From contig NW_027142325.1 of NCBI RefSeq assembly GCF_036365525.1, forward strand, positions 310,001 to 374,000: a DNA stretch of 64,000 nt, written 5' to 3'. Positions within the stretch are counted from its first letter, which is position 1. The number at the start of each line of letters is the position of its first letter. Below, piece by piece: positions 25,101 to 49,789 of this stretch. The notes under the pieces are model-generated. The model had not been told where the DNA came from. It made no database searches and worked only from the letters and a program-made list of their open reading frames with translations. The position numbers and the translations under genes were made by a program. Source of the stretch: Heterodontus francisci (taxonomy: Eukaryota).

Positions 25101-27058
25101 CCAGCCTGTAACTCACTGTTATTTATCCATTATTCTATGTATAAACTACCCAAATCCCTCTGTTATATTCCGGCCTGTAACTCACCGTTATTTATCCATT
25201 ATTCTATAAATTACCCAAATCCCTCTGTTATATTCCGGCCTGTAACTCACTGGTATTTATCCATTATTCTATGTATAAACTACCCAAACCCCTCTGTTAT
25301 ATTCCAGCCTGTAACTCACTGTTATTTATCCATTATTCTATGTATAAACTACCCAAACCCCTCTGTTATATTCCAGCCTGTAACTCACTGTTATTTATCC
25401 ATTATTTAATGTATAAACTACCCAAACCCCTCTGTTATATTCCAGCCTGTAACTCACCGTTATTTATCCATTATTCTATAAATTACCCAAATCCCTCTGT
25501 TATATTCCGGCCTGTAACTCACCGTTATTTATCCATTATTCTATAAATTACCCAAATCCCTCTGTTATATTCCAGCCTGTAACTCACTGTTATTTATCCA
25601 TTATTCTATGTATAAACTACCCAAATCCCTCTGTTATATTCCAGCCTGTAACTCACCGTTATTTATCCATTATTCTATAAATTACCCAAATCCCTCTGTT
25701 ATATTCCGGCCTGTAACTCACTGTTATTTATCCATTATTCTATGTATAAACTACCCAAACCCCTCTGTTATATTCCAGCCTGTAACTCACTGTTATTTAT
25801 CCATTATTCTATGTATAAACTACCCAAACCCCTCTGTTATATTCCAGCCTGTAACTCACCATTATTTATCCATTATTCTATGTATAAACTACCCAAACCC
25901 CTCTGTTATATTCCAGCCTGTAACTCACTGTTATTTATCCATTATTCTATGTATAAACTACCCAAATCCCTCTGTTATATTCCAGCCTGTAACTCACCGT
26001 TATTTATCCATTATTCTATGTATAAACTACCCAAATCCCTCTGTTATATTCCAGCCTGTAACTCACTGTTATTTATCCATTATTCTATGTATAAACTACC
26101 CAAACCCCTCTGTTATATTCCAGCCTGTAACTCACTGTTATTTATCCATTATTCTATGTATAAACTACCCAAACCCCTCTGTTATATTCCAGCCTGTAAC
26201 TCACTGTTATTTATCCATTATTCTATGTATAAACTACCCAAACCCCTCTGTTATATTCCAGCCTGTAACTCACTGTTATTTATCCATTATTCTATAAATT
26301 ACCCAAACCCCTCTGTTATATTCCAGCCTGTAACTCACCGTTATTTATCCATTATTCTATAAATTACCCAAATCCCTCTGTTATATTCCGGCCTGTAACT
26401 CACTGTTATTTATCCATTATTCTATAAATTACCCAAATCCCTCTGTTATATTCCAGCCTGTAACTCACCGTTATTTATCCATTATTCTATAAATTACCCA
26501 AATCCCTCTGTTATATTCCGGCCTGTAACTCACTGTTATTTATCCATTATTCTATAAATTACCCAAATCCCTCTGTTATATTCCAGCCTGTAACTCACCG
26601 TTATTTATCCATTATTCTATAAATTACCCAAATCCCTCTGTTATATTCCGGCCTGTAACTCACTGTTATTTATCCATTATTCTATAAATTACCCAAATCC
26701 CTCTGTTATATTCCAGCCTGTAACTCACCGTTATTTATCCATTATTCTATAAATTACCCAAATCCCTCTGTTATATTCCAGCCTGTAACTCACCGTTATT
26801 TATCCATTATTCTATAAATTACCCAAATCCCTCTGTTATATTCCGGCCTGTAACTCACCGTTATTTATCCATTATTCTATAAATTACCCAAATCCCTCTG
26901 TTATATTCCAGCCTGTAACTCACCGTTATTTATCCATTATTCTATAAATTACCCAAACCCCTCTGTTATATTCCAGCCTGTAACTCACTGTTATTTATCC
27001 ATTATTCTATGTATAAACTACCCAAACCCCTCTGTTATATTCTAGCCTGTAACTCACT
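22190..27058 (+). repeat. ~4.9 kb minisatellite, 69-bp unit with a 65-bp variant, about 70 copies
   Basis: Unit ctctgttatattccagcctgtaactcactgttatttatccattattctatgtataaactacccaaaccc; the variant lacks 4 nt (tgta). Confidence 0.98.
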
Positions 27059-27220: not shown

Positions 27221-27604
27221 AGGTTTCTGCTAATGGTTGGACAATGAGCACTGCGGATGATGTGAGTGTTGAGGAAGGAGGGTCCGCTGTCTTGCCGTGT
27301 ACTTTCACTCACCCACACCCTGATCAGACGGTCACCGGCTCTGTGATATGGTACAAAGGCCGTTACAATGTTATTTTTAAGTGTACATATTCTGGTCCGG
27401 GCCATTCACAGAGTGAGCTGTGTGAGAATGTGATACAGCAGGACGGCGGGAATCGATTCAGATTCGTGGGGAACTTCAGTAACAAAGATGTCTCAATAAT
27501 GATGGAGCGGCTGATCCGGGCGGACAGCGGTCCTTATCAGTGTCGTGTGGAGCTCAATATTGGAAATATTAATGTACTGAAACTAACGAGTCTGAGAGTG
27601 GAAG
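27221..27604 (+). CDS. SIGLEC15-like: Exon encoding end of signal peptide plus Siglec-15-like V-set Ig domain (V1)
   Basis: Acceptor (ct)n-ccacag|27221, donor gaag|gtgagg at 27604; 384 nt, phase 1/1. Translation xVSANGWTMSTADDVSVEEGGSAVLPCTFTHPH...IWYK...IFKC...SELC...RFRFVGN...DVSIMMERL..ADSGPYQCRVEL parallels the recalled Siglec-15 V-set (WSMQVP..EAGDAAVLPCTFTHPH..IW..VFRC..SELC..RFRLLGN..DLSLRVERL..ADDRRYFCRVEF): all four Cys and the Arg of C-R-V-E are kept. Confidence 0.93.
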
Positions 27605-27624
27605 GTGAGGAACAATGTTCAGGG

Positions 27625-27900
27625 GCTGCAGCTGCCCCGATAGCTCAATGGCTAAAGACTCCACCTGGTCTGGTCCTGAACCACATGGGTAAATAAACTC
27701 TCAGCAATCCCGGGATTTGAAAGGGGAATATTGCCCGGGATTCCTGCTCCTGATCACTCTCCAGACACTCCTGCTGGAAGGTGTCTTATTGGACATTGAA
27801 TAAGACAATGGGCCAGCATGTGATGCTCTCCACAGTCAAATAGTCCATTGCCACTCATTGACCAGGCTTGTGCTGTAAGGAAGGCCATCTGGGTGAGATC
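27625..27900 (+). mobile_element. LF-SINE-like element just downstream of exon V1
   Basis: gggattcctgctcctgatcactctccagacactcctgctggaa...gtgatgctctccacagtcaaatagtcc...cactca...ggccatctgggtgag resembles the recalled LF-SINE body. Confidence 0.6.
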
Positions 27901-28916
27901 AGTAATAATATTTTAGGATAATGAGCTATTTCAGTTTGGACATTGGGTAAGTGCAGCATGTCCATCTCAGTCTCAGTGCTGTAGGCCTGCAGTGTCCAGC
28001 TCAAAGCTGATTGGACCTGTTCCACCACTTCATATATTCTCAGTGGAGAATTGGCGGGTGGATCACAGGGAGACGATGTCAATTGGGTCATTGCTGCTCA
28101 GCTCACACTTCAGGGCAGTACCGAGGGAGTGCTGCACTGGCTGAGGTGCCATTAGCTGCACTTTAACCTTCCTCCGATGTTGCCCCGCACGTCGATTGAA
28201 TCTTCTGGGCATTTCTGGGACCAATGGGAAATGATATTTAACCGAGACAAATGCAGTGTGATGCGGGTAGGTAGGATCAACACGGAATTCACTGAACATT
28301 TACAGGGAATAATACAGAAAGTGGCTGAGAGAGAAAAGGATCGAGACTGTTAATGTACACACATCACTCAAAATTCACAACCAATGCAGTGAAGCCATTG
28401 ACAAAACAAACAGGGCATTGGGTTGTATTAACAAAACCATTCAGTACAAGTCAAACCACTTCCCACTTTCTGCTAGTCTGAGAAACGTCCCTGACCTCTT
28501 ACCCTCTGTTTCCTGTTTTGTCACCATCTTTCAATCTGTTCTGCTACCCGGCCTCCTGAGCCCACAATCCCTGGGATCTCCACTGGCTGAGTACTACACT
28601 GGGCAATGCCTCTACCTACTGGACCACAGGGAGAGCTCAGAACTGAAATAAATTAAAGTTCTCATCAAGACCTGGATTTTGCTGCCTCACTGTGTGGTGG
28701 AGGGAGGTTCAATTGAAACATTTAAAAGGGAATTAGATTGAAATAAAGGAAGAATGTGCAGGGTTTTGGGGAGAAGGCGGGGGGAATAGCAGGAAGTGAA
28801 TTGCTCTTTCGGTGAGCCGGTGCAGACATGTTGGGCTGAATGGTCTCCTTCTGCAGTGTAACAATTCTGTGATCTGTGAAGACACTGATCCATTCTAATG
28901 TCTGTCCTTTCCTCAG

Positions 28917-29267
28917 CTGCTAGTGGAAATGTCTCAGTGGTGACTGGGACCGAGGGAGCTTCAGTTACATTGCCCTGTATGTTCACACCCAGGAGTTACC
29001 GCACCCTGTCCACTGTTACATGGATGAGGAAGGAGCCCTACCAACACATAGTCACATTTAGAGCCCAATCAAATGGATCTTGGACAACTGCAAATGGTGG
29101 AAATCGGTACGAGCTCATCGGGAATCCAAAGGAGGGAAACGCCTCAACCAGGATAAACCAGCTGAGTGTGAATAACAATCACACTTACCTGTGTCTGGTG
29201 GAATACACATCATTGGACAATTATCAACATCTGATCCAGACTGAGACACAGCTGCAGGTTGTACATG
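28917..29267 (+). CDS. SIGLEC15-like: Exon encoding second V-set Ig domain (V2) of the Siglec-15-like receptor
   Basis: Acceptor tgtcctttcctcag|28917, donor catg|gtaaga at 29267; 351 nt, phase 1/1, in frame with V1. V-set pattern EGASVTLPC..TW..RYELIGNPKEGNAS.RI..L....TYLCLVE; WMRKEPY echoes Siglec-15 WRAGEPY; four N-X-S/T sequons (NVS, NGS, NAS, NHT). Confidence 0.9.
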
Positions 29268-29339
29268 GTAAGAAACCATTCCCACATTCTCCAGTGTATC
29301 GAGGTTGTACAGTGAGGGTGAGCAGTGTAATATAAAACA

Positions 29340-29650
29340 CTCATCAGCTGTGGCTCAGTGGTTATCACTCTCACCTCTGAGTCAGTCGGTTGTGGGTTCA
29401 AGACACTCCAATGCAATACTGATGGAATGTGACACTGTTTAAGGTACTGTGTATGAGAAGAGATATTAAAGTAAGGCCTTATCTGGAAGAGTATGGGAGT
29501 TGACCTAATGTCCTGGTCAATACTTATCTCTGAACCAACATCATCAAACCATAGTCTGATAATTATCTCATTGCTGTTTATGGGATCTTGCTGTGTGCAA
29601 ATTATCTGCTGTGTATCCTGCATTAAAACAGTGACTACACTTCAAAAACA
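29340..29650 (+). mobile_element. Deu-domain SINE
   Basis: tRNA-like head gtggctcagtggttatcactctcacctctgagtcag..gggttcaag; body tatgggatcttgctgtgtgcaaatt...cagtgactacacttcaaaa. Confidence 0.6.
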
Positions 29651-30366
29651 AAGTTCTGTCATTCACTGACTTCCTGGCTGACCTGCATCTTAACTCCATT
29701 TAATGAACTTGTTTCTGGAACCCTTCCTACCCTTGTCTAACAAAATCTATCAATCTCAGTGTTGAAATTTTCAATACATTCCCAGCATCAATAGCTTTTC
29801 CAGGGAGAGTTTCAGATTTCCATTATCCTTTGTGTGAAGAAGTCCTTCCTGACATCACCCCAAACAGCCCAGCTCTAATTTGAAGGTTATGGCCCCTTGT
29901 TCTGGACTCTCCCACCAGAGGAAATAGTTTCTCTCTATCTGTCCGGTGCCAGGGATCGGGACATCGGCTCAGGGCTGGAGAGGAACTTGCAGTGGGAGGG
30001 GGAGGATCCAGTTGTCATCATCCCCATGGGTACCAACAACGTATTTATAGAACCAGGAAAAAGGTTCTGCAAAGCGAGTATGAGCAGCTAGAAGCTAAAT
30101 TAAAAAGCAGGACCACAAAGGAAATAACCTCTGGGGTATTACCTGAGCCACGAGCATATTGGCGGAGGGTAAATAAGATTAGATAGTTAAATGCATCGCT
30201 CAAAGAGTGATGAGGGAGAACTGGGTTTTGATTTATGGGGCACTGGCACCTGTACTGGGGAATGTGGGAGCTGTACCGTTGGCACGGTCTTCATCTGAAC
30301 CATGTTGGGACCAGTGTTCTGTTGAGTCATATAACTAGGGCAGTAGAGAGGGCTTTTACACTAAAA

Positions 30367-33050
30367 GGAAGGATGAATGAGAATGGACAGAGACTGCTTG
30401 AGTTGTGTACCTATCATAACCTCTGCATCACCAACTTGTTCTTTCACACTAAACCCTGTCACCAGGTTTCTTGGAGGCACCCAAGATCACGTCGTTGGCA
30501 CCAGCTGGACCTCATCGTCACAAGGCGAGCCTCTCTAAACAGCGTTCAAATCACACGCAGCTTCCACAGTGCGGACTGCGACACCGACCACTCCCTGGTG
30601 TGCAGCAAAGTTAGACTCAAACCAAAAAAGCTGCATCACTCCAAGCAGTAGGGCCGCCCGCGCATCAACACGAGCAGAATTTCTTATCCACAGCTGTTAC
30701 ATAAGTTTCTAAATTCACTTGAAAAAGCCCTTCAAAACACTCCCTCAGGGGATGCAGAGACCAAGTGGGCCCACATCAGAGACACCATCTATGACTCAGC
30801 AATGACCACCTATGGCAAACGTGTGAAGCAGAATGCAGACTGGTTTCAATCTCACTTTGAAGAGCTGGAACCTGTCATAGCCGCTAAGTGCATTGCACTG
30901 CTGAACGACAAGAAAGCCCCCAGCGAGTTAACATCCGTAGCACTTAAAGCAGCCAGAAGCACTGCACAAAGAACAGTCAGGCGCTGCACAAATGACTACT
31001 GGCAACACCTATGCAGTCATATTCAGCTGGCCTCTGACACCGGAAACATCAGAGGAATGTTTGATGGCATTAAGAGAGCTTTTGGGCCAACCATCAAGAA
31101 GATCGCCCCCCCTCAAATCTAAATCAGGGGACACAATCACTGACCAAGGCAAGCAAATCGACCGCTGGGTTGAGCACTACCGAGAGCTGTACTCCAGGGA
31201 AAATGTTGTCACTGAGACCATCCTCAATGCAGCCCAGTCTCTGCCAGTCATGGATGAGCTGGATGTACAGCCATCAAAATCGGAACTCAGTGATGCCATT
31301 GATCCTTTAGCCAACGGAAAAGCCCCTGGGAAGGACGGCATTACCCCTGAAATAATCAAGAGTGCCAAGACTGCTATACTTTCAGCACTGTACAAACTGC
31401 TTTGCCTGTGCTGGGATGAGGGAGCAGTACCACATGACATGCGCGATGCCAATATCATCAACCTCTGTAAGAACAAAGGTGACCGCGGTGAATGCAACAA
31501 CTACTGTGAAATCTCCCTGCTCAGCATAGTGGGTAAAGTCTTCGCTCGAGTTGCTTTAAACAGGCTCCAGAAGCTGGCTGAGCGTGTCTACCCTGAGGCA
31601 CAGTGTGGTTTTCGAGCAGAGAGATCCACCACTGACATGCTGTTCTCCCTTCGTCAGATACAGGAGAAATGCCGTGAACAACAGATGCCCCTCTACGTTG
31701 CTGTCATTGATCTCACCAAAGCCTTTGACCTCATCAGCAGACGTGGTCTCTTCAGACTACTAGAAAAGATCGGATGTCCACCAAAGCTACTAAATATCAT
31801 CACCTCATTCCATGACAATATGAAAGGCACAATTCAGCATAGCGGCGCCTCATCAGACCCCTTTCCTATCCTGAGTGGCGTGAAACAGGGCTGTGTTCTC
31901 GCACCCACACTGTTTGAGATCTTCTTCTCCCTGCTGCTCTCTCATGTGTTCAAGTCTTCAGAAGAAGGAATTTTCCTCCACGCAAGATCAGATGGCAGGT
32001 TGTTCAACCTTGCCCGTCTAAGAGCGAAGACCAAAGTACAGAAAGTCCTCATCAGGGAACTCCTCTTTGCTGACGATGCTGCTTTAACATCTCACACGGA
32101 AGAGTGCCTGCAGAGTTTCATTGACAGGTTTGCGGCTGCCTGCAATGAATTTGGCCTAACCATCAGCCTCAAGAAAACGAACATCATGGGACAGGACGTC
32201 AGAAATGCTCCATCCATCAATATCAGTGACCATGCTCTGGAAGTGGTTCAAGAGTTCACCTAGCTGGGCTCAACTATCACCAGTAACCTGTCTCTGGATG
32301 CAGAAATCAACAAGCGCATGGGAAAGGCTTCCACTGCTATGTCCAGACTGGCCAAGAGAGTGTGGGAAAATGGCGCACTGACACGGAACACAAAAGTCCG
32401 AGTGTATCAAGCCTGTATCCTCAGTACCTTGCTCTACAGCAGCGAGGCCTGGACAAAGTATGTCAGCCAAGAGCGACGTCTCAATTCATTCCATCTTCAC
32501 TGCCTCCGGAGAATCCTTGGCATCAGGTGGCAGGACCGTATCTCCAACACAGAAGTGTTCGAGGCGGCCAACATCCCCAGCTTGTACACACTACTGAGTC
32601 AGCGGTACTTGAGATGGCTTGGCCATGTGAGCCGCATGGAAGATGGCAGGATCCCAAAGGACACATTGTACAGCGAGCTCGTCACTGGTATCAGACCCAC
32701 CAGCTGTCCATGTCTCCGCTTTAAAGACGTCTGCAAACGCGACATGACGTCCTGTGACATTATTCACAAGTCGTGGGAGTCAGTTGCCAGTGATCGCCAG
32801 AGCTGGCGGGCAGCCATAAAGGCGGGGTAAAGCGTGGCGAGTCGAAGATACTGAGCAGTTGGCCGGAAAAAGAACAGAAGCGCAAGGGGAGAGCCAACTG
32901 TGTAACAGCCCTGACAACCAATTTTATCTGCAGCGCCTGTGGAAGAGTCTGTCACTCTAGAATTGGCCTTTACAGCCACTCCAGGCGCTGCTCCACAAAC
33001 CACTGACCACCTCCAGGCGCTTACCCATTGTCTCTCGAGACAAGTAGGCC
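30367..33050 (+). mobile_element. RTE-clade LINE, 5'-truncated, few disruptions
   Basis: NENGQRLLELC..HPRSRRWHQLD..DTDH (APE); PEAQCGFR, GVKQGCVLAP, LLFADD (RT); RWLGHV.RMEDGRIPK. Confidence 0.93.
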
Positions 33051-34390
33051 AAAGAGTGGGGGGAAGAGATCATGTGAGAGGAGATGTGGTAAATCAAATG
33101 AAAACGATAAGGTAATCGAGCAGAGTGGCGAATTAAGTAGTGATAACCAGAGTGCGGCAAGCTTAAGAGTGTACCAGCAGAGAAGACCAGAGATGGCAGA
33201 AATGGTATAAAGAGAGAGTTAAAGGCGCTGTATCTGAATGCACACAGCATTCGTAATGAACAGTTGCTACACTGTATGACAGAGTATACAGGAAGAAATA
33301 AATGGGGCCTGTAAGAAAGGTACTGCAATCACATGGGTGATTTTAATCTATATAGATTGGACGAATCAGATTGGCAAATGTTGCTTGAAAAATGAGTTCA
33401 CAGAGTGTATTTCGGACAATTTCACAGAGCAGTACGTTCTGGAACCAACTAGGGAGCATGCTATTCTAGACCTGGTAATGTGCAATGAGACAGGATTGGT
33501 CATTAACCTCATGGTAAAGGAGCCTCTAGGTGACAGTGATTATAACATGAGAGAATTTCACATTCAGTTTGAAGGGGAGATGTGTGGGCCTAAGACGAGT
33601 GTTTAAACCTAAATAAAGGTAAATACAAGAGTATGCCAGCAAAAAATATAAAATCAGACTGTAAAAGCTTCTACAGGTACGTAAAAAGGAAAAAGACAAA
33701 TGTGGGTCCATTACAGGCAGAGTAAGGACAATTTATAATGGGAATAGAGAAATGGCAGAGAAGCTAAATAATTATTTTGTGTCTGTCTTCCCTGAGGAAG
33801 ATATAAGAAATTTCCCAGAATTAGAGATCCAAGGGGTTAGGGGGAATGAGGAATTGAAGGAAATTAGTATTAGTAAGAAGATTGTATTGGAGAAATTAAT
33901 GGGGCTGAAGGTTGATAAGTCCCCGGGACCTGATATTCTACATCCCAGAGTGTTTAAAAAGGTAGCTATGGAGATAGTGGATGCATTGGTGATCATCTTC
34001 CAAAATTCTATAGATTCTGGAGCAATTCCTGCAGATTGGAAGGTTGCAAATGTCATCCCACTATTTAAGAAGGGAGGGAGAGAAAACAGGGAATTACAGA
34101 CCTGTTAGCCTTACATCGGTCATTGGGAAAATGCTAGAATCTATTCTAAAGGATGTGATAAATGGACACTTGGATAATAATGATCTGATTGGGCATAGTC
34201 AACATGGATTTATGAATGGGAAATCATGTTTGATGAACCTGTTGAAGTTTTTTGAGGATGTTACTAACAGAATTGATAAAGCAGAGTGGTATACCTGGAT
34301 TTTCAGAAGGCTTTTGATAAAGTCCCCCACAGGAGGTTGTTTAGCAAAATTAAAGCACATGGGATAGGAGGTAATCTACTGGCATGGATT

Positions 34391-35560
34391 TCTTTCTTTT
34401 TCTTTTTCTTTTGGGCCTCCTTATCTCGAGAGACAATGGATACGCGCCTGGAGGTGGTCAGTGGTTTGTGAAGCAGCGCCTGGAGTGGCTATAAAGGCCA
34501 ATTCTGGAGTGACAGGCTCTTCCACAGGTGCTGCAGAGAAATTTGTTTGTTGGGGCTGTTGCACAGTTGGCTCTCCCCTTGCGCCTCTGTCTTTTTTCCT
34601 GCCAACTACTAAGTCTCTTCGACTCGCCACAATTTAGCCCTGTCTTTATGGCTGCCCGCCAGCTCTGGCGAATGCTGGCAACTGACTCCCACGACTTGTG
34701 ATCAATGTCACACGATTTCATGTCGCGTTTGCAGACGTCTTTATAACGGAGACATGGACGGCCGGTGGGTCTGATACCAGTGGCGAGCTCGCTGTACAAT
34801 GTGTCTTTGGGGATCCTGCCATCTTCCATGCGGCTCACATGGCCAAGCCATCTCAAGCGCCGCTGACTCAGTAGTGTGTATAAGCTGGGGGTGTTGGCCG
34901 CTTCAAGGACTTCTGTGTTGGAGATATAGTCCTGCCACCTGATGCCAAGTATTCTCCGAAGGCAGCGAAGATGGAATGAATTGAGACGTCGCTCTTGTCT
35001 GGCATACGTTGTCCAGGCCTCGCTGCCGTAGAGCAAGGTACTGAGGACACAGGCCTGATACACTCGGACTTTTGTGTTCCGTGTCAGTGCGCCATTTTCC
35101 CACACTCTCTTGGCCAGTCTGGACATAGCAGTGGAAGCCTTACCCATGCGCTTGTTGATTTCTGCATCTAGAGACAGGTTACTGGTGATAGTTGAGCCTA
35201 GGTAGGTGAACTCTTGAACCACTTCCAGAGCGTGGTCGCCAATATTGATGGATGGAGCATTTCTGACATCCTGCCCCATGATGTTCGTTTTCTTGAGGCT
35301 GATGGTTAGGCCAAATTCATTGCAGGCAGACGCAAACCTGTCGATGAGACTCTGCAGGCATTCTTCAGTGTGAGATGTTAAAGCAGCATCGTCAGCAAAG
35401 AGGAGTTCTCTGATGAGGACTTTCCGTACTTTGGACTTGGCTCTTAGACGGGCAAGGTTGAACAACCTGCCCCCTGATCTTGTGTGGAGGAAAATTCCTT
35501 CTTCAGAGGATTTGAACGCATGTGAAAGCAGCAGGGAGAAGAAAATCCCAAAAAGTGTGA
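34391..35560 (-). mobile_element. RTE-clade LINE 3' fragment with open 335-aa reading frame
   Basis: LLFADD...RLRWLGHVSRMEDGRIPK...CSTCGRACHSRIGLYSH; (aagaaa)n tail at 34391-34412. Confidence 0.93.
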
Positions 35561-35944
35561 AAAAAACTAATTGAAACCTACAAAATACTTAAAGGGATAG
35601 ACAGAGTAGATGCAGCCATGATGTTTCCCCTGGGTGAGGAGTCTCGAACCAGGGGACACAATTTCAAAATAAGCGGGAAGCCACTTAGGACAGAAATGAG
35701 GAGAGATTTCTTTACTCAGAGGGTTGTGAATCGTTGGAATTCTCTACCCCAGAGGGCTGTGGAAGCTCAGTCATTGAGTGTGTTTAAAGCAGAGATTGAC
35801 AGATTTCTAAATACCAATGACATAAGGGGATATGGGGATAATGTGGGAAAAATGCATTGAAGTGGATGATCAGCCATGATCATCTTGAATGGCAGGGCAG
35901 GCTGGATGGGCTGAATGGCCTACTCCTGCTCCTATGTTCCTATG

Positions 35945-38310
35945 AAGGCAGAGTTATCTAAAGTGAACTGGGAAACTAGGTTAAAAGGTAGGACAGTAGA
36001 GATGCAGTGGCAGACTTTTAGGGAGATATTTAATAACTCTCAGCAAAGATTTATTTGAGTGGAAAGAATGATTCTTTGAGAAACATGCATCATCCGTGGT
36101 TAAATAAGCAAGTTGAGGATAGTATCAAATGAAAGAAACACTGTATAAATCTGCAAAGGTTAGTGCTGTGTCAGAAGCTTGGACAGTCTGAGAGAGAACT
36201 AGCTGGTGATATAAAAACAGATTGTAAGGGTTTCTACATGTATTTAAATAAGAAAAGAGTAACTAAAGCTAGAATTGGTTCTCTAGAGTGTGAGTCTGGG
36301 TAATTGATCATGGTAAACAAGGAAATAGCGGAGGTGTTGAACAGGTATTTTGTATCTGTTTTCACTGCAGAAGACTGAGAAAACCTGCCAAAGATACTTG
36401 AAAATCAGGAGGTGAAAGGGAGGGAGAAATTTAAAACAATCACCATCACCAGGGAAAAGCTGCTGGGAAAACTATTAGGCCCAAAGGTTGACAACTCCCC
36501 AGGATCAGATGGTCTGCATCCTAGGGTCTTAAAAGAAGTGGCTGCAGACAGAGTAGAGGCTTTGTTTATAATCTTCCAAAATTCATAGATTCTGGAAGGG
36601 TCTGAGCGGATTGCAAAATAGCAAATGTAAAATCTTCATTCAAGAAAGGAGGGAGACAGGAAGCAGGAAACTATAGGCCAGTTCGTCTAACATATATCAT
36701 AGGGAAATTGCTAGAATCCATTATTAAGGAGTTTATAGAAGGATACTTCGAAAATCATAATGGGATCTGACAGACTCAACATGGTTTTGTAAAAGGGAAA
36801 TCATGTTTAACTAATTTATTAAAGTTCTTTGAGGAATTCACAAGCAAGGTGGATAAAGGGGAATCTGTAGTTGTGGTGTACTTGGACTTCCAAAAGGTAT
36901 TTGATAAGGTGTCACATAAAAGGTTACTACACAAGATAAGAGCACATGGTGTAGGAAGTAACATATTAGCATGAATAAAAGACTAGTTAGTTAACATGAA
37001 GCAGAGAGTAGGGATAAATGGGTCTTTTTCAGGTTGACAAGATGTAACAAGTGGAGTGCCACAGGGTTCAGTGCGGGTGCCTCAACTATTTTAAATTTAT
37101 GTCAATGAATTGGGGCGGCACAGTGGTTAGCACCGCAACTTCACAGCTCCAGGGACCCGGGTTCGATTCTGGGTACTGCCTGTGTGGAGTTTGCAAGTTC
37201 TCCCTGTGACCGCGTGGGTTTTCGCCGGGTGCTCCGGTTTCCTCCCACAGGTGATAGGTAAATTGGCCATTGTAAATTGCTCCTAGTGTAGGCAGGTGGT
37301 AGGGAATATGGGATTACTGTAGGGTTAGTCGGGACAGACTCAGTGGGCCAAAGGGCCTGTTTCAGTGCTGTATCGCTAAATAAAATATAAATAAAAAGAG
37401 ACCAAATGTATGGTTGCTAAATTTGCCCAGGACACCAAGATAGGAAGTAAGCTGTCAAGAGGACATAAAGAGTTTACAAAAGGATATAAATAGATTAAGT
37501 GAGTGGGTAAAAATTTAGCAGATGGAGTATAATGTGGGAAAATGTGAACTTGTCCACTTTGACAGGAAGCTTAGAAAAGCGGTATACTATTTAAATGGAG
37601 AGAGATTGCAGAACCCGGTGGTACAGAGGGATCTGGGTGTCCTGGTACATGAGTCACAAAAGGTTAATATGCAGGTACAGCAAGTGATTAGGAAGGTAAA
37701 TGGAACATTGATGTTTATTGCAAGGGAAATTGTGTGTCAAAGTGGGTAAGTTTTACTGCAGCTGGACAGGGCCTTGTGAGACCACATCTGGAGAACTGTG
37801 TGCAGTTTTGGTCTCCTTATTTGAAAAGGATATAATTGTGTTAGAAGCAGTTCAGAGACGGATCACTCGACTAATTCTGGGGATGGAGAGCTTATCTTAT
37901 GAAGAAAGGTTGAACAGGTTGGGCCGAGACTTGTTGGAGGTTAGAACAATGAGAGGTGATCTTACTGAAACATATAGGTTCCTGAGGGGACGTGATAGAG
38001 TGTATACTGGGAGGGTGTTTTCTCTTGTGGGGGAGACGAGAACTAGGGGACACAGTTTAAGAATAAGAGCTCTCCCTTTTAAGATGGCGATGAGGAGAAT
38101 TTCTTTTTCTCGAACGGTCATTAGTCTGTGGAATTCTGTTCCCCAGAAAGCAGTGGAGGCAGGGTCAATGAGTTTATTCAAAGCTGAGTTAGATGGATTT
38201 TTGATAGACAAGGGAGTCAAGGGTTATGGGGGGGGGCAGACAGGAAAGTGGAGTTAGGATCACAACCAGATCAGGAATAATCTTATCGAAAGGCGGAGCA
38301 GGCTCACAAG
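35945..38310 (+). mobile_element. Decayed CR1 ORF2 to 3' end
   Basis: [32 protein letters not shown] motifs. Confidence 0.85.
37111..37397 (+). mobile_element. HE1-type SINE
   Basis: ggggcggcacagtggttagcaccgc...gggttcgattc...gggcctgtttcagtgctgtatc, (taaa)n tail. Confidence 0.85.
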
Positions 38311-38526
38311 AACAAAAGAAATAGCAGCAGGAATAGACCATGTGACCCGTCAAGCCTGCTCCGCCATTCAATATGATCATGGCTGATCTTGGGCTTCAAT
38401 TCCACTTTCCCGCCCAGCCTCAGTCTCAGCCTTAAATATATTCAGTGATGGAGCATCCGCAACCCTCTGGGGTAGAGAATTCCAAAGATTCACAACCCCT
38501 TGAGTGAAGTAATTTCTCATCTCAGT

Positions 38527-39365
38527 TGTCATACTGGGCCCCCCACCTGCCAAGAATGAGGCACATTAATTTCACCACACGGACATTAAATTTCAAATTG
38601 TTGTTGGGAAGAAGAGAAGGCCTGTGACAATGGGTTACCAGGCCCCTGGCTGGAAAGATATTTTTGGAACAAAGGAGCTATCCCCTGCTCCAATACAATC
38701 CACAAACAGATGTGGTCAGACCAGTTAGTCACATGACTAACCTGCTTGGTTGGCATCTCGATTTATTTCTGATTTGTACAGTTTTGAACTGAGAATCTGC
38801 AGAAAACTGTTTACTCCCAGACTGAAGAAGACCTCCTGTCTGTCTGTCTGCCTGCTCCCATCGCTTTCTCACCAGCTTCTGAATCCATTGAAGACACATG
38901 AACCCCAAGAGAGAAAAGTCTCCTACAGTGAACAAGGTTTAAGAAGAATACTGGGCCCCAATGAAAAGCAAGATCTGCTTACAAGCAAGGACTCTGCAGT
39001 GAGTTCGAAGACCTGTAACAAAAACTCTTCAGATATTGCTGTAAGCTTTTACGCTTTATTTCTTCTGCTCTTTTCTGTCCCTATCTGCATGTGTATACCA
39101 CGTATGCATGCTAGCATGAGCGCGTCGTGCATCCATAGGCATTAACTGAATTAGAGTTTAAGTTTAATAAAATTTCACTTTTCTTCTTTAAACCTAAGAA
39201 AATCTGTTTGTGCTGGTTTCATTGCCTTATAATTGGAAAGCTGTGAACAAGAGTTCACCAAGGGAGAGCTAAAAACACAGTGTATTTGAAATAAAACCCT
39301 GTTACAGTAATACCAGGTGAAGGCCGAAAGGGAATCCTAGACCTCTTTCTCACCTGATCGTAACA
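38527..39365 (+). mobile_element. Solo LTR with perfect 4-bp TSD (CAGT)
   Basis: cagt|tgtca...cacctgatcgtaaca|cagt; related to the LTR at 56413-57149. Confidence 0.9.
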
Positions 39366-39394
39366 CAGTCCTTATCCTGAGACTGTGCCCCTGT

Positions 39395-40414
39395 TGTTAC
39401 GAGGGTTTCCATTTTTTGTTATAACTTGAGAATCTATATTTTAAAAACTGAAAAGGATTCCATGGATGCTGGAATCTTCAAGAAGCTGAACTTTGGATGT
39501 TTTTTTATGGGAAGGTCAACAGAAGGTTGACCATTAAACAAATTTTACTGAAAAACATCGGTTTGCAAATAACCCAGCAGGGTGTTTGTGCTGTGACTCT
39601 GAAAAGGATGTTTACAAGGAAATGACAAACCAAGATTTCAGGTTGTCATACAGCCTGCCTCTGGAAAAGCTTTTGTTTCATTTTGAACTCTTAAGAAAGG
39701 CCAGTGGTTGTTTGGCCAAGAACAGAAAGAAATTTGCTTCCTGACCTGCCAGAAGAAAACAGCTCTCTCTTTAAAGAATTCCTGCATCAAGTTGTATTGT
39801 TGCCTCCCTGTATTTGAAGAAATCCTGAATATTTTCAGAAACCTTGCATCTTTGAAAGAACTTTGCATAGAATGTGCAAGAATTGAAACCTTTGTTACTG
39901 CACATCTGATGTAAGACTTATGCAATGCCTTCCGTAGCTGCATCTCTTGAAAACCTACCTAGACTGTTCATCAACATTGTTGGAAAGAACTGTTCTAGGA
40001 CGATTCCCAGTGGCAGCCACCTATTCGCCTTTGGGACACCTCGCCAACACAGAGGACTTCCATACCTTCTCTTCAGTCTCAGTTTTTTATTCCTTCCAAC
40101 TGTAACAGTTGTAAACAAAAATCATTTTTTCTCCCGGTTAACCGGTTGTTTATGTGAGTGTGTGAGGGCGAGGATAAAAATAAAGGGTTTTAATATTTCA
40201 ATTCGTGCATATGTTTACTTCATTATTGGTTAAGACTTAGTTTATAATAAATGGATAATTTTGTTGTTTATTAAAAAATATCTGGTTGGTGTGCTTTATT
40301 CTGGAGTAAAATAGATTGGCTGTTTCAGTAAGTGGGAAAATTTAAATACATGTTGTGACCTGTGGAGAAGTGGGACTGAATTAACAGTGCACTCCTCCTG
40401 CCTCGGTTATAACA
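39395..40414 (+). mobile_element. Solo LTR (different family; 3' end related to the LTR at 878-1774)
   Basis: tgttac...ttataaca termini; cctgtggagaagtgggactgaattaacagtgcactc resembles ~1675-1710. TSD unclear. Confidence 0.75.
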
Positions 40415-40914
40415 TCTTGTTTTAGATTCCCCGCATGGCGGAAACAATCTCTCAGTGTCTACCCGATCCAGAACTTTCAGAATCATGTACATTTCAATGA
40501 GATGCCTCACATTTTTCGAAATTCCAGAGAATGTAGTCCCAATTTACACAGCCTTTCATCATAGGACAACCCCCTCATCCCAGGGACCAATTTAGTGAAC
40601 CTTCGCTGCAACCTCTCCAATGCAAGTATATCCTTTTTTAAATGTGGAGACCAAAAATGCACACAGTGTTCCAGATGTGGTCTCACCAAATCCCTGTACA
40701 ATTATAGCAAGACTTCTTTATTCCTGTACTCCAATCCCCTTGCAATAAAGGCCAACATGCCATTTGCCTTCCTAACTGCTTGCTGTACCTGCATGCTATC
40801 TTTTTATGCTCGAAGGGTGACAGTATTAAACCTTTTCATTGTAAATACAACAGTATTAACTTGTCACTGTAAATACTACTGTATTAATCCCTGTCACTGT
40901 AAGTTTTTTTATTA

Positions 40915-41205
40915 GAGTCATAGAAAGATACAGCACCGAAACAGGCCCTTCGGCCCACCGAGTCAGCACCGACCATCAACCACCCATTTATACTTATCCT
41001 ACATTAACCCCATATTCCCTCTCACATCCCTACCTTCCCTCAATTCTCCTAACATCTACCTACACTGGAGGCAATTTTACAATGGCCAATTTACCTATCA
41101 ACCCTCAAGTCTTTGGCTGTGGGAGGAAACCGGAGCACCCGGAGGAAGCCCACACGGTCACAGGGAGAACTTGCAAACTCCGCACAGGCAGTACCCAGAA
41201 TTGAA
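40915..41205 (-). mobile_element. HE1-type SINE, 5'-truncated
   Basis: gatacagcaccgaaacaggcccttcggcccacc...gggaggaaaccggagcaccc. Confidence 0.82.
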
Positions 41206-41432
41206 TTTCTACAGGATTAATCCCTGTCAGTGTAAGGAACTATATTATTCATACACTCCAATTGCCATTTTCATTCACAGTCCATACTCTTCGCTTAATT
41301 GAGGTCCATCACGATATTTCTGTCCTGCAATCGAGATTCACAATTATCCACAGACTTTGATTAATTGTCTCTGCATTGTTGGTCTCTCACCTTTGCTTGT
41401 CTCTAATTTGATTTCTTTCTCTTTCTGTTCAG

Positions 41433-41532
41433 CTGCAGAGACTTTCCCCATTGCGATATTGTGCATTCCACTTGGAGTGAAACTCCTCGCCCTTATAGTG
41501 ATGTGGATTATTTTGTTGAGGGATAAATCCAG
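41433..41532 (+). CDS. SIGLEC15-like: Transmembrane exon with intramembrane lysine
   Basis: Strong acceptor tttctttctctttctgttcag|41433 (phase 1, matching the V2 donor), donor tccag|gtatgt (phase 2). Encodes AAETFPIAILCIPLGVKLLALIVMWIILLRDKSR; LGVKLL resembles the Siglec-15 TM LGFKALL. Confidence 0.85.
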
Positions 41533-41634
41533 GTATGTAATATTGCTGGGAGACTCTTGTCTTTAAATGCCTGAAGCTTGATTCATGGGTGAGCTTTGGT
41601 GGTGATTCAAACACTTGAGCCATTCTGGTCGATG

Positions 41635-41862
41635 AACAACCACACAGTGCATGTCCAGCAGAGGTCGCTGGATCCCAGCAGGATCAGGAACTCTGGGCAA
41701 TGTTTCCTTTCCCTATCCCAGTAGCTCTTGGACCAATTGGAGAGCCCCGACTGCAGCCCAGCTGGGATTGGCTAACTCAGCCCAGACATGGGATGGAAAC
41801 TGGCCCCTTCCTGGTCTGTATGATTCAGCTCCTCACAGCAGGAACTTGCTGAGCTATCGGGG
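41635..41862 (-). mobile_element. LF-SINE-like element just downstream of the TM exon
   Basis: Minus strand ccccgatagctcag...catacagaccaggaagg...gctgagttagccaatcccagc...cagagttcctgatcctg...atccagcgacctctgctgga. Confidence 0.6.
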
Positions 41863-42449
41863 ACCTGATTAAATCTCCCAGACCACCTGTATTCACTATT
41901 GTCTATTTTAATCTGCAAGGTTAAGCCCTCAGGGCATATTATGGTTCAAAACTGATTGAGTTGAATTTGATTGCAGTGCTGGGTTATTGACAGTCAGATT
42001 CCTGTTCACTTTCCAACCTCAGTCTTTCCCCAAGGCTTTCTGGAAAACACCAACCACTCACCTCAAGACCCGGAAAAAGAATAAAACACTCTGGGGATTG
42101 GCTGCTGTTCAGATGATGAGAATGATGGTTATCACAGTGTTGAAAATGATTCGCAGTTCCCTTTGACTCAGTTTTTGGTCACCTGTCCTCATATCTCCTC
42201 ATGTGACTCGGTGTTCCATTTTGCCTGATTGTGTTCCTGTGAAGCACATGTTAAAAGTGCTATATAAATGCAAGTTTTTGTTCTTGCTATATAAACAAAG
42301 TGACTCCTGACATCGCAGCGGTCTGCTGACATAATCAGAGCGCTCCAAGCTGTGAACATGTGCAAACGGTCGCCTGCGCTGAGATGCTGCACATACTCAG
42401 CCTACGTCTTGCCAGGACTAACTGGTGCATGCGAAGGAAAACATTCTCC

Positions 42450-43855
42450 CCCCTCGCCCACTCACTCCCCACTCCTCGCTTCCAGCCACCCTGCTCTCCA
42501 GCTGCTCACTCCCCTCTTCCGCCCACCATCCTGCTCTCCAGCTGCTCACTCCCCTCTTCCGCCCACCATCCTGCTCTCCAGCTGCTCACTCCCCTCTTCC
42601 GCCCACCATCCTGCTCTCCAGCTGCTCACTCCCCTCTTCCGCCCACCATCCTGCTCTCCAGCTGCTCACTCCCCTCTTCCGCCCACCATCCTGCTCTCCA
42701 GCTGCTCACTCCCCTCTTCCGCCCACCATCCTGCTCTCCAGCTGCTCACTCCCCTCTTCCGCCCACCATCCTGCTCTCCAGCTGCTCATTCCCCTCTTCC
42801 GCCCACCATCCCACTCTCCGGCCGCTCACTCCCCGCTTTCCCCGGCCCATCCCGCTCTCCGCCGCTCACTCCCCGCTTTCCCCTCACCATCCCGCTCTCT
42901 GGCCACTCACCCCCCCACTTTCCCCACCCCCCCCATCCCTCCAGATGCTAGCTCCAAGGCCCGCTGCTTCCTTCCTCTCGGCTACTCGATCCCACATTCG
43001 ATCGTTCCTCACCGCACTGCCCAGAGAAGCCAGGTGGGCCTGGAGGGGTGATGGAACGATATTGGAGTGAGTGGCCGAGAGGATGGAAGCGGCGCGGCCT
43101 GGAGCTAGTGTCTGGAGGGATGGTGGGGTAAGCGGGAAGTGAGCAACCGGAGAGTAGGAACCGGGGGAAGCGGGGAGTGAGCAGACGGAGAGTGGGATGG
43201 GGGGGAAGTGGGGAGTGAGCGGCTGGAAAGTGGGATGGGGGTGGAAGCGGGGAGTGAGCGGCCGGAGAGTGGGATGGGGGGGGGGAAAGTGGGGAGTGAG
43301 CGGCCGGAGAGTGGGATGGGGGGGGAAGCGGGGAGTGAGCGGCCGGAGAGTAAGATGGCGGGGGGGATACGGGGAGTGAGCGGCCAGAGAGTGAGATGGG
43401 GGGGGGGGGAAAGGGGGAGTGAGCGGCCAGAGAGTGAGATGGGCGGGAAAGCGGGGAGTCAGCGGCCGGAGAGTGGAATGGGGGGGGGAAGGGGGAGTGA
43501 GCGGCCGGAGAGTGGGATGGGGGTAGAAACGGGAAGTGAGCGGCTGGAGAGTGGGATGGGGGGGAAGCGGGGAGTGAGGGGCCGGAGAGTAGGATTTGGG
43601 GGAAGCGGGGAGTGAGCAGCCGGAGAGCTTGATCGGGTGTGGGGGCGAAGCAGGGATTGAGCGGCCGGAGAGCTTGATCCGGTGTGGGGGGGAAGCAGGG
43701 AGTGAGCAGCCGGAGAGCAGGATGGGGGGGGGGGCGGGGAAGTGGGGAGTGTGCAGCCGGAGAGTGGGATGGGGGGGGGGGAGCGGGGAGTGAGCGGCCG
43801 GAGAGCAGGATGGGGGGTGAAGCGGGAAGTGAGTGAGCGGACAGCGGGATGGCAC
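42450..43855. repeat. Foldback structure: C-rich ~40-bp minisatellite arm, short spacer, inverted G-rich arm
   Basis: About 8 near-identical 40-bp units from 42491. 42930-43000 is the approximate reverse complement of 43058-43130, and the right arm consists of gggagtgagcggccggagagtgggatggggg units. Confidence 0.88.
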
Positions 43856-44254
43856 TGAAACCTCACTGAATTACGGAGGGTGTGCAGCACTGTCAGAGGT
43901 GCTGTCCTTCTGAGAAAGTTTAAACAGTGCAACGTTCTCCGAGTATCAACCAAAACATGTCCATTGTCTGCTGTCATGTTTGCTTATGAAATGACAGTCA
44001 CTGCTCCTAAAGTAATTCACTTTAGGTGAATTAAGATGACTAGCTACTAAATAACTGGCGCATGCGCAGGAGGGAGGGGAGACTGTTGGGGGTGGGATGG
44101 CGGTGGCAGCATGACAATATTTGAGTGGATCTTTGGGTTGAAGTTGTTTATCTGTGATAAACAGATAAACCATCATTAATCCTGGCAGCTGCCTGAACGT
44201 CGCAGACACTGATGTTACAGTGGAACAGGCTGCATTTTCGCATGTGCTAGTACT

Positions 44255-44268
44255 GCGCCACCTGATGG
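44255..44268 (-). promoter_or_regulatory. CTCF-like binding motif
   Basis: Minus strand reads CCATCAGGTGGCGC, close to the CTCF core consensus CCACCAGGGGGCGC. Confidence 0.45.
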
Positions 44269-44498
44269 TTGCGTTGTCAGCAAACGCCGCCCTTTATAAA
44301 TGCAAGTTGTTGTTCTTGCTGAAAACAGGAACAACAATCAGACCCATTGTGTCAGTGTTTAACACTGATAATCTAATCTGTTTTTAAATACATGGGGAAT
44401 CCTATGTAAACAGCTGCAGGTTGTATATGGCGGTTCTGAAAATGCTCTTATTTTACTGTTAATATGGCTCATTTTATTTAATCTTGTTTTGTCCCCAG

Positions 44499-44514
44499 AA
44501 AGGAGCAGGACTGA
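44499..44514 (+). CDS. Probable terminal coding exon (short cytoplasmic tail ...SR-KEQD*)
   Basis: Long pyrimidine tract ttttatttaatcttgttttgtccccag|44499; a phase-2 join gives AG|A AAG GAG CAG GAC TGA. A weaker alternative acceptor exists near 42022-42034. Confidence 0.5.
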
Positions 44515-44708
44515 TCCATCGCAGGAGGCTGAGAAACTGAATGTTCAAACCGCAATATAAACCTGTTCCACTCGCCCTGCACTGAATCTCATCCAGCAAT
44601 TTAAACTGGACTTGCTTTGGTCATCATTCACTGTGTGATCCTGGGTACTGAGTACAAAATTCTTCCTGTTAATCAGCTATTCAGCAAGGTTCTGCATCAC
44701 ACTGTGAT

Positions 44709-44870: not shown

Positions 44871-45142
44871 GTTACTCTGAATGGAATCTGAATGTGAACA
44901 TTCTCAATATCAGTCTGTCTAAATGGCCAGGCTTTATTTATGGTGTAAACAGTGGGAGAGCTCATGGGGCAGAGGTGACTGTGAGTAGGACAGGTTTGAA
45001 ACCCCAATTATTCCAGCTGCTTTGCTCAGGGAACTGGCTGCTGTTTCTAGCTCCTCGGCTGTGACGGGAGATTCTGCTGGAGGTCAGTCAGCTTTCAATA
45101 ACTGATCTCAGAGTGAATCTGTGCTTTTACTGTCAGTCGATC

Positions 45143-45213
45143 AAAGTTACATGATGGAGCTGCAATGATTGTGAACACTGTACACAATCCTGGTAGCTCC
45201 ATCATGTAACTTT
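45143..45213. other. 71-nt near-perfect hairpin (pre-miRNA-like)
   Basis: aaagttacatgatggagct (45143-45161) is the exact reverse complement of agctccatcatgtaacttt (45195-45213); inner stem gattgtg/cacaatc. Confidence 0.6.
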
Positions 45214-49229: not shown

Positions 49230-49277
49230 ATGGGTTCTCTCTACGTTTGGCTTTCCGCTGTCTTATTGTCGGTCTCG
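49230..49277 (+). CDS. Putative signal-peptide (leader) exon of a downstream gene
   Basis: Good Kozak context gcgATGg; encodes hydrophobic MGSLYVWLSAVLLSVS followed by tcg|gtacgg, in apparently non-TE sequence. Donor is phase 0; no downstream exon recognised in the window. Confidence 0.45.
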
Positions 49278-49789
49278 GTACGGAGTTACAGAAGGTGCTT
49301 TCGAATAATAACTGTTCAAATTCATTTTGTTGTTAAAGTCATTGAATGGTTACAGCACAGAAGGAGGCAGTTCAGCCCACCGTGTCTGTGCTGGCTCGCT
49401 GCATGAGCAACTCAGCTAGTCCCACTCCCTTGTCCCGTTCCCGTAGCTTTGTAAATATTTTCTCTTCGGGTGTTTAGCATTCACTGTGTGATCCTGATAC
49501 AGAGTACAAAGTTCTTCATGTTAAACAACTCTTCAGCTCGTCTCTGATCACACACTCATTTCAAATGGAATCTGAAAATGATCTTTCCCAACCTAAGTCT
49601 GTATAAATGCAGGTGGTTATAAATTCTGGTGCAGCCATTTCGGGAAAGCGGGGACCTCAAGCTACTGCCCTGTGTTAATGCTGAGTCCTGAGACTCTCCC
49701 AATATTCAGCCTTAAGGTTCTCTATAATGGAGCAGGTGAGGTACAAACAGCAGCTGTACTGAGGAACCTGAGGGAGTGACCGCGGCCCG

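What the first reader, a model, noticed from the sequence alone, without database searches (positions are those of the whole stretch)
27221..44514. Shark Siglec-15-like receptor with a non-canonical V-V-TM(Lys) architecture and minimal tail
Seen: four exons with canonical splice sites and matching phases (1/1, 1/1, 1/2, 2/stop) join into an open frame of about 283 codons across about 17 kb of TE debris. Known: Siglec-15 is V-set + C2-set with a TM lysine that recruits DAP12/DAP10. Here the C2 position holds a second V-set domain, and the TM is a separate exon 12 kb away. Inference: a lineage-specific sialic-acid-binding activating receptor derived from Siglec-15, possibly part of an undescribed cartilaginous-fish family or cluster.
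Basis: partly seen in the sequence, partly recalled or inferred. Interest (0 to 1): 0.85.

Follow-up and report, generated by a model that had tools for sequence, protein, structure and literature searches.

The report
Shark Siglec-15-like activating receptor gene
This is one intact-looking copy of a large shark and ray gene family related to the sialic-acid receptor Siglec-15; the family has two V-type domains, no C2 domain, and both activating and inhibitory versions, but I could not show that this particular copy is expressed.

Summary
The four exons are real. They have canonical GT..AG sites and matching phases, and they read V-set, V-set, TM(Lys), then a 5-residue tail (283 codons).

**Kinship with Siglec-15.** Both V exons hit human Siglec-15 best among solved structures. 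V1 keeps the sialic-acid Arg, the Siglec-15-specific extra disulfide and the Trp/Tyr contacts. V2 has Leu in place of the Arg. The TM motif IPLGVKLL matches bird Siglec-15 VPLGIKVL.

[quoted passage not shown] Of 85 public elasmobranch models, 22 are V-V-TM(K)-short tail and 27 are V-V-TM-ITIM. This is therefore a paired activating/inhibitory family. I found no paper that describes it.

V2 does not replace C2. Chimaera, ray and shark also have V-V-C2-TM proteins, and their V2 domains form one clade with this family's V2 (99/98). V2 is therefore old, and this family lost C2. The 12-kb intron holds no C2 remnant.

**Caveats.**
- No leader exon lies in the 27 kb upstream.
- RNA contigs show the V1-V2 joint but carry paralog letters at diagnostic sites.
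- No public protein is identical to this copy.
- Sialic-acid binding and adaptor pairing are inferred.

The scan has noted this family many times in this genome.

The parts
22198..27058 (+). 69-bp satellite (71.5 copies) that ends 163 bp before the V1 acceptor; presumably inside the long first intron
   Evidence: Tandem Repeats Finder. The pattern scan found 72 copies, all in this block.
27221..27604 (+). Exon encoding V1, a Siglec-15-type V-set domain. It has the F-strand Arg (YQCRVEL), the B-F Cys pair and the extra Cys pair (FKC...ELC)
   Evidence: Translation. Pfam V-set 9e-13. PDB 7zoz 3.4e-17 with the Arg, Trp, Tyr and four Cys aligned. AF2 model plus Foldseek, top hit 7zoz_A.
27605..28916 (+). 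Intron between V1 and V2 (GT..AG)
   Evidence: Sequence. A joint skipping 1312 bases is seen in all four RNA-like runs.
28917..29267 (+). Exon encoding V2, a second V-set domain with Leu where V1 has the Arg (YLCLVEY)
   Evidence: Translation. Pfam V-set 2.8e-15 over profile positions 5-108 of 109. PDB best hit is the Siglec-15 V domain (4.9e-9). AF2 model has 9 strands and pLDDT 89.7. Foldseek returns only V-type domains, with TM 0.81 to 7zoz_A.
29268..41432 (+). 12.2-kb intron filled with LINE fragments; no Ig or C2 exon
   Evidence: tblastn of 237 relatives, including canonical Siglec-15 and chondrichthyan V-V-C2 proteins, gave no Ig hit at E<=1. RVT_1 reverse-transcriptase ORFs.
41433..41532 (+). 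Exon encoding the short stalk and the transmembrane helix with Lys (AETFPIAILCIPLGVKLLALIVMWIILLRDKS)
   Evidence: Translation. 100% identical to the TM part of RefSeq paralogs P0175, P0224 and P0227. The Lys sits in the same register as in tetrapod, lungfish and chimaera Siglec-15 kin.
44499..44514 (+).
   Evidence: Sequence. The same end is found in RefSeq paralog P0175.
44503..44560 (+). Alternative reading of the last exon. An acceptor AG 4 bases downstream, or skipping of the TM exon, gives the tail RSRTDPSQEAEKLNVQTAI*
   Evidence: Sequence. The tail is present in RefSeq isoforms P0174, P0222, P0228 and P0232, and in Heptranchias P0004.

Best explanation
The stretch holds the four downstream exons of one paralog of an elasmobranch multigene family descended from the Siglec-15 lineage. 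Its leader exon lies outside the window.

The product would be a type I membrane protein. It has an N-terminal V-set domain built like the Siglec-15 sialic-acid-binding domain, with the key Arg in place. A second, strongly conserved V-set domain follows and lacks that Arg. There is no C2 domain. The transmembrane helix carries a Lys at the Siglec-15 position, and the tail of 5 (or 20) residues has no Tyr.

**Inferred mechanism:** V1 binds a sialylated ligand. The TM Lys pairs with the Asp of an ITAM or YxxM adaptor (DAP12/DAP10 type), which signals activation. Sister genes with nearly the same ectodomain but an uncharged TM and ITIM/ITSM-like tails give the opposing signal, so the family would act as paired receptors.

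**Shown:** exon structure, domain types, kinship with Siglec-15, the family's architecture classes, and the age of V2.

**Inferred:** the ligand, the adaptor, and the function of this copy.
For: - **Exons and frames:**
- **Domain types:** V-set for both Ig exons.
- **V1 and Siglec-15 by sequence:** the best solved relative is 7zoz (3.4e-17). W44, C64, Y87, C95, C104, C142 and R143 are all aligned and conserved. Those residues are defined as the disulfides, the sialic-acid salt bridge and the contacts in PMC10264397.
- **V1 and Siglec-15 by fold:** the V1 model's top hits are Siglec-15, sialoadhesin, Siglec-7, CD33 and Siglec-8.
- **Conservation of the Arg:** it is kept in 58 of 68 distinct family V1 domains.
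- **TM motif:** IPLGVKLL against gull Siglec-15 VPLGIKVL.
- **Paralog models:** identical joints in RefSeq P0175.
- **RNA:** the V1-V2 joint is seen in four RNA-like runs of the same animal.
- **Family census:** 22 activating-type and 27 ITIM-type V-V models.
- **Paired ectodomains:** WIN_V2 is 98% identical to the V2 of an inhibitory paralog, and WIN_V1 is 93% identical to the V1 of another.
- **Age of V2:** the V2 clade is shared with the V-V-C2 proteins of Callorhinchus, Mobula and Heptranchias, at 99/98.
Against: - No leader exon or promoter copy lies in the 27 kb upstream.
- At 27309 and 29174 every RNA contig carries another letter than the window, so the transcripts seen come from paralogs.
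- The loose end after 29267 runs into an inhibitory-type exon that is absent from the window.
- No public protein is identical to this copy. The best match is P0221, at 99% in V1 and 93% in V2.
- The G-strand contact region of human Siglec-15 (DRYE) is not conserved.
- No binding or adaptor data exist, and I did not verify a shark DAP12.
Confidence: 0.7

Rival explanations
1. This copy is a silent or dying duplicate in a birth-and-death cluster. The four exons are still intact, but the gene lacks a usable leader or promoter and is not expressed.
For: - No leader lies within 27 kb upstream, and a 4.9-kb satellite abuts V1.
- The window's own letters at 27309, 29174 and 27567-27571 are absent from the RNA contigs.
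- Among the clusters I listed, no RefSeq protein is identical to it.
- The family's public models include many truncated or chimeric ones, such as P0030 and P0221.
Against: - There are 283 codons without a stop or frameshift, six canonical splice sites, and all conserved Cys, Trp and Arg residues are kept.
- The next gene's leader at 49230 is also more than 14.7 kb from any V exon, so long first introns are normal here.
- Contigs drop rare variants and show presence, not absence.
Confidence: 0.3
2. The protein is a Siglec-15 relative by descent but not a sialic-acid lectin. V1 and V2 together bind a protein or pathogen ligand, and the Arg is a relic.
For: - The G-strand contacts of human Siglec-15 are not conserved.
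- 10 of 68 family V1 domains have lost the Arg.
- V2 is more tightly conserved than V1 (TWMRKEPYxHIVTF is nearly invariant). This suggests a constrained function of its own.
Against: - The Arg, the Trp, the Tyr and both disulfides of the Siglec-15 site are kept in this copy and in 85% of the family.
- The V1 model's fold neighbours are almost all sialic-acid-binding Siglec domains.
Confidence: 0.25
3. It belongs to another shark or skate IgSF receptor family (MDIR/CD300/pIgR-like or TIM-like) and only resembles Siglec-15 by chance.
For: - V2 also hits TIM-2 (1.2e-7) and pIgR (1e-5).
- NCBI's automatic names for family members are inconsistent (pIgR-like, HAVCR1-like, JAML-like, CD33-like).
- MDIRs are activating/inhibitory multigene families in skate.
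Against: - V1 scores 30 bits higher on Siglec-15 than on any other solved protein, and it shares the Siglec-15-specific second disulfide.
- The best non-elasmobranch relatives in 1.8 billion representatives are named Siglec-15.
- The TM Lys motif is shared with Siglec-15.
- V-V-C2 kin carry a Siglec-15-type C2.
- No hit bore an MDIR name.
Confidence: 0.05

Closest known systems
Siglec-15 of tetrapods (human Q6ZMC9, structure 7ZOZ)
   Same: - The N-terminal V-set has the B-F disulfide, the extra C'-C'' disulfide, the F-strand Arg, and the Trp and Tyr contacts.
- The TM Lys sits in the motif PLG-x-K-x-L.
- It is the best sequence and fold match for V1, and the best sequence match for V2.
   Different: - Tetrapod Siglec-15 is V-C2-TM with a tail of about 45 residues. 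It is named consistently as Siglec-15 and is activating only.
- Here there is a second V-set, no C2, and a tail of 5-20 residues.
- Here there are also many paralogs, including ITIM-bearing ones.
Chondrichthyan V-V-C2-TM proteins (Callorhinchus XP_042192165, Mobula hypostoma XP_062903801 'Siglec-15 isoform X2', Heptranchias XP_067838218)
   Same: - They have the same V1-V2 order, and their V2 domains form one clade with this family's V2 (99/98).
- Two of the three have a TM Lys.
   Different: They keep a Siglec-15-type C2 domain between V2 and the TM. Their V1 is only about 33-36% identical to the window's V1. They are better candidates for the true SIGLEC15 orthologue.
RefSeq models of Heterodontus francisci paralogs (XP_067885083, XP_067885291 and others)
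   Same: They have identical exon joints, an identical TM exon, and V1 and V2 that are 86-99% identical.
   Different: None is identical to this copy. They have leaders, and this copy's leader was not found.
Paired activating/inhibitory receptor families (CD33-related Siglecs, KIR, skate MDIR)
   Same: Near-identical ectodomains are joined either to a charged TM with a short tail or to an uncharged TM with ITIM-type motifs. The genes sit in tandem clusters.
   Different: The ectodomain descends from the Siglec-15 lineage. To my knowledge that lineage is not a paired family in mammals. MDIRs are reported as CD300/pIgR-like.

Membership tests
Siglec-15 | N-terminal V-set domain with the F-strand Arg that salt-bridges sialic acid (R143) | tested here: met
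   YQCRVEL aligns with YFCRVEF of 7zoz. The role of R143 is described in PMC10264397. The Arg lies in strand 103-111 of the model.
Siglec-15 | Second intradomain disulfide C95-C104 (C' strand to C'-C'' loop), unique to Siglec-15, plus C64-C142 | tested here: met
   All four Cys are aligned. They are conserved in 65-68 of 68 family V1 domains. The feature is described.
Siglec-15 | One C2-set domain between the V-set and the membrane | tested here: not met
   The second domain is V-set. No C2 exon lies in 29268-41432.
Siglec-15 | Lys in the transmembrane helix | tested here: met
   IPLGVKLLALIV is in register with mammal, bird, frog and lungfish Siglec-15.
Siglec-15 | Association with DAP12/DAP10 | not testable with these tools
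   No adaptor sequence of this species was in hand, and literature look-ups gave nothing for sharks.
Siglec-15 | Binding of sialylated glycans | not testable with these tools
   This needs protein expression and a glycan or cell-binding assay.
Siglec-15 | Orthology to SIGLEC15 (tree position, synteny) | tested here: inconclusive
   In the tree, the family's V1 clade, the V1 of V-V-C2 kin and the tetrapod clade are joined by unsupported branches (58/86 and lower).
Siglecs in general | V-set followed by one or more C2-set domains | tested here: not met
   The architecture is V-V-TM.
Paired activating/inhibitory receptor family | Paralogs with closely similar ectodomains, with either a charged TM and short tail or an uncharged TM and ITIM-type motifs | tested here: met
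   P0175 and P0174 are the charged-TM type; P0171, P0173 and P0176 are the ITIM type. WIN_V2 is 98% identical to an inhibitory paralog's V2. Census.
MDIR / CD300 / pIgR-like receptors | V domains most similar to CD300, TREM or pIgR | tested here: not met
   V1 has no CD300 or pIgR chain among the best 60 solved chains. V2 hits pIgR only at 1e-5, below Siglec-15. Skate MDIR sequences themselves were not compared.

The most novel reading that the evidence does not exclude
Sharks and rays have turned the Siglec-15 lineage into a large, fast-turning family of paired activating and inhibitory receptors with a V-V ectodomain that has lost C2. In mammals, to my knowledge, this lineage is a single activating gene. 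This would be an independent invention of what CD33-related Siglecs or KIRs do in mammals. The shared V2 of chimaera, ray and shark V-V-C2 proteins would also mean that the early chondrichthyan Siglec-15 was V-V-C2.
Probability: 0.5. Interest if true: 0.7.

Novelty: new variant of a known kind. Interest (0 to 1): 0.5.

Why it matters
Siglec-15 is treated as the conserved, single, activating Siglec of vertebrates, and it is a drug target in bone disease and cancer.

- **A different evolutionary course.** An elasmobranch family keeps Siglec-15's sugar-binding domain and TM Lys but adds a second V domain, drops C2 and spawns ITIM-bearing twins. The lineage can therefore evolve like a classical paired-receptor family.
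- **Natural variants.** The family offers natural variants of the binding site: Arg kept in 58 of 68 V1 domains and lost in 10.
- **Age of sialic-acid immune sensing.** It makes testable how old paired sialic-acid sensing by immune cells is.

For this window alone the gain is modest. It is one of many copies, and public gene models of its paralogs already show the architecture.

Tried and rejected
- **Leader exon.** I searched the window by tblastn with five paralog leaders, and by blastn with the 49230 leader region. The only hit was the downstream leader itself.
- **C2 exon or remnant in the 12-kb intron.** I found none.
- **Inhibitory-type TM or tail exon in the window.** I found none.
- **Hits at 62411-62611 and 62921-63019.** These are transposon-derived pieces of chimeric public models, not receptor exons.
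- **Joined model.** Each exon was searched by reference.
- **Literature.** Searches for a description of the family in sharks, cartilaginous fish, elephant shark or fish evolution found nothing relevant. The MDIR look-up gave only a secondary mention. The DAP12 look-ups said nothing about sharks.
- **Not used.** I did not run complex prediction because no adaptor sequence of this species was in hand.
Full report
**Observation.** The four exons exist as described.
- V1 is 27221-27604, V2 is 28917-29267, and the TM exon is 41433-41532. The last exon starts at 44499 and its stop is at 44512-44514.
- All introns are GT..AG.
- The split codons give Ala, Ala and Arg. The frame runs for 283 codons and ends ...LLRDKS-R-KEQD.
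- Pfam calls both Ig exons V-set (9e-13 and 3e-15; V2 covers profile positions 5-108 of 109).
- The TM exon reads AETFPIAILCIPLGVKLLALIVMWIILLRDKS.
- I did not search or fold the joined model.

**Kinship with Siglec-15, by sequence.**
- Among all solved structures, V1 hits human Siglec-15 (7zoz) at 3.4e-17. CD33 comes next at 2e-7.
- That alignment keeps W44, C64, Y87, C95, C104, C142 and R143. The structure paper names these as the two disulfides (the second one unique to Siglec-15), the sialic-acid salt bridge and two ligand contacts (PMC10264397).
- The G-strand contacts (DRYE) are not kept.
- V2 also hits the Siglec-15 V domain best (4.9e-9). It has Leu where the Arg should be, and only two Cys.

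**Kinship with Siglec-15, by fold.**
- The V1 model (AlphaFold2, built on a family alignment, pLDDT 85) has 7zoz_A as top fold match. Sialoadhesin, Siglec-7, CD33 and Siglec-8 follow.
- The V2 model (pLDDT 90) has nine strands including C' and C''. It matches only V-type domains, and its highest TM-score (0.81) is to 7zoz_A.

**Transmembrane segment.** The TM Lys lies in the same register and motif as in Siglec-15 of mammal, bird, frog and lungfish (IPLGVKLL against gull VPLGIKVL).

**The family.**
- A search of 1.8 billion representatives found 244 relatives.
- The closest relatives are all from sharks and rays: Heterodontus, Heptranchias, Mustelus, Chiloscyllium, Hemiscyllium, Stegostoma, Rhincodon, Pristiophorus, Rhinoraja, Amblyraja, Hemitrygon, Hypanus, Mobula and Narcine.
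- The nearest non-elasmobranch relatives are named Siglec-15.
- Heterodontus francisci models are 86-99% identical to the window's exons. The TM exon is 100% identical to three of them. The window is therefore from that species or a very close one.
- P0174 ends RSRTDPSQEAEKLNVQTAI. In the window this tail follows from an acceptor 4 bases further on.
- TM-skipping isoforms reach the same tail in frame.
- P0171, P0173 and P0176 have the same two V domains joined to an uncharged TM and a tail with ITIM/ITSM-like motifs (CTYAEL, CTYASI, VIYAAV).
- A census of 85 family models gave 22 V1-V2-TM(K)-short tail, 27 V1-V2-TM-ITIM, 16 V1-V2 without a TM, and a few V1-only forms. None has a C2.
- The window's V2 is 98% identical to the V2 of an inhibitory paralog. 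Its V1 is 93% identical to the V1 of another.
- This is the signature of a paired activating/inhibitory receptor family.

**Origin of the V-V layout.**
- The C2 and TM part of mammalian and bird Siglec-15 finds a Siglec-15-type C2 in Callorhinchus P0025, Mobula P0043 and Heptranchias P0023. By Pfam these proteins are V-V-C2-TM.
- Two of the three have the TM Lys.
- In a careful maximum-likelihood tree of 66 V domains, all V2 domains of the V-V-TM family and the V2 domains of these V-V-C2 proteins form one clade (99/98). The V-V-TM V2 domains form a subclade within it (100/99).
- V2 is therefore older than the split of chimaeras from sharks and rays. The window's family is best read as V-V-C2 minus C2, not as a V domain put in the place of C2.
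- Lungfish Siglec-15 (P0019) has a V duplication of its own (97/87).
- The deeper links among the V1 clades and tetrapod Siglec-15 are not resolved. Orthology to SIGLEC15 is left open, and the V-V-C2 genes are the better candidates.

**No C2 in the intron.** tblastn of all 237 collected relatives against the window found no Ig-like hit between 29350 and 41350 at E<=1. That stretch holds LINE reverse-transcriptase fragments on both strands.

**Is this copy alive?**
- Four DNA runs of one sample hold 0.91 of the stretch's words, so the copy is real DNA.
- Four small runs of the same sample behave like RNA. Depth is confined to the two exons, and a GT..AG joint of 1312 bases is present in all four. 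One 593-base contig spans V1-V2 spliced.
- These are contigs of a multigene family, which limits what they show. At 27309 and 29174 every contig carries another letter than the window. The contig across the joint has 10 mismatches.
- The loose end after 29267 continues into an inhibitory-type stalk exon that is absent from the window.
- The splice pattern is therefore shown for the family, not for this copy.
- The V2-to-TM and TM-to-last-exon joints rest on RefSeq paralog models only.
- No leader exon or second promoter copy lies in the 27 kb upstream. A 69-bp satellite of 71.5 copies ends 163 bp before V1.
- The single leader exon in the window (49230-49292) lies 4.7 kb after the last exon and more than 14.7 kb from any V exon. 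First introns in this cluster are therefore long, and this gene's leader may simply lie beyond the window.
- Earlier notes of this scan place another V-V-TM(K) gene 37 kb before the window.
- No listed public protein is identical to this copy.
- Against decay: there are 283 open codons, six good splice sites and all conserved residues.

**Mechanism.**
- Shown: the domain make-up and the conserved site.
- Inferred from what is established for Siglec-15: V1 binds a sialylated ligand through the Arg. The TM Lys recruits a DAP12/DAP10-type adaptor. The Tyr-free tail does not signal by itself. ITIM-bearing paralogs counteract.
- The Arg is kept in 58 of 68 distinct family V1 domains and lost in 10 (His in 5, Gly in 2).
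- V2 is more uniform than V1, and TWMRKEPYxHIVTF is nearly invariant. This suggests a constrained role as a spacer or a second contact surface.

**Novelty.**
- I found no paper that describes this family.
- Skate MDIRs are reported as CD300/pIgR-like. Their sequences were not compared directly.
- Public automatic gene models already show the architecture, and this scan has flagged the family many times in this genome.
- I rate it a new variant of a known kind, of moderate interest. This window is one ordinary member of the family.

Noticed in passing
window 22198-27058: A 69-bp satellite, 71.5 copies at 95% identity, ends 163 bp before the V1 acceptor. Scan notes report a ~70-bp repeat as a Tx1 retrotransposon target just outside both ends of the window.
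   Followed up: partly
window 49230-49292 (+): A leader exon (MGSLYVWLSAVLLSVSVR...) of the next family member lies 4.7 kb after this gene's last exon. The upstream extension used in paralog model P0175 holds a stop here. Where paralog protein models imply a phase-1 end after TAC A, the DNA reads TACAGAAGgt. The next GT would give a different phase.
   Followed up: partly
window 33358-33603 and 30432-30819 (+): The RefSeq model XP_067884631 (P0030), from a paralogous locus, runs from V1/V2 into transposon ORFs that are 98.8% identical to this intron. That makes it a chimeric gene model. It also means the intron's transposons were copied along with the gene.
   Followed up: partly
window 44499-44560: The last exon is read in two frames in the family: RKEQD* or RSRTDPSQEAEKLNVQTAI*. 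The two acceptor AGs are 4 bases apart, and TM-exon skipping reaches the long tail in frame, giving a soluble isoform. The long tail is conserved in Heptranchias.
   Followed up: partly
window 42461-43852: G+C-rich tandem repeats (40-bp unit in 11 copies; 39-45-bp units in about 18 copies) lie in the intron between the TM exon and the last exon. G+C is 0.61 in this 2-kb bin.
   Followed up: no
window 30992-32263 (+), 34458-35465 (-): LINE reverse-transcriptase ORFs (RVT_1, 3e-30 and 1e-6) lie in opposite orientations inside the V2-TM intron.
   Followed up: partly
window 45056-45180 and 51845-51969: A 125-base stretch is repeated at 98.4% identity on either side of the next gene's leader. A first-stage note flags a hairpin here.
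   Followed up: no
P0019 (Protopterus), P0018 (Pleurodeles), P0001 (Protopterus, 7 V domains): Lungfish Siglec-15 and a newt 'Siglec-12-like' protein each have their own tandem V duplication. One lungfish protein strings seven such V domains before a C2.
   Followed up: partly
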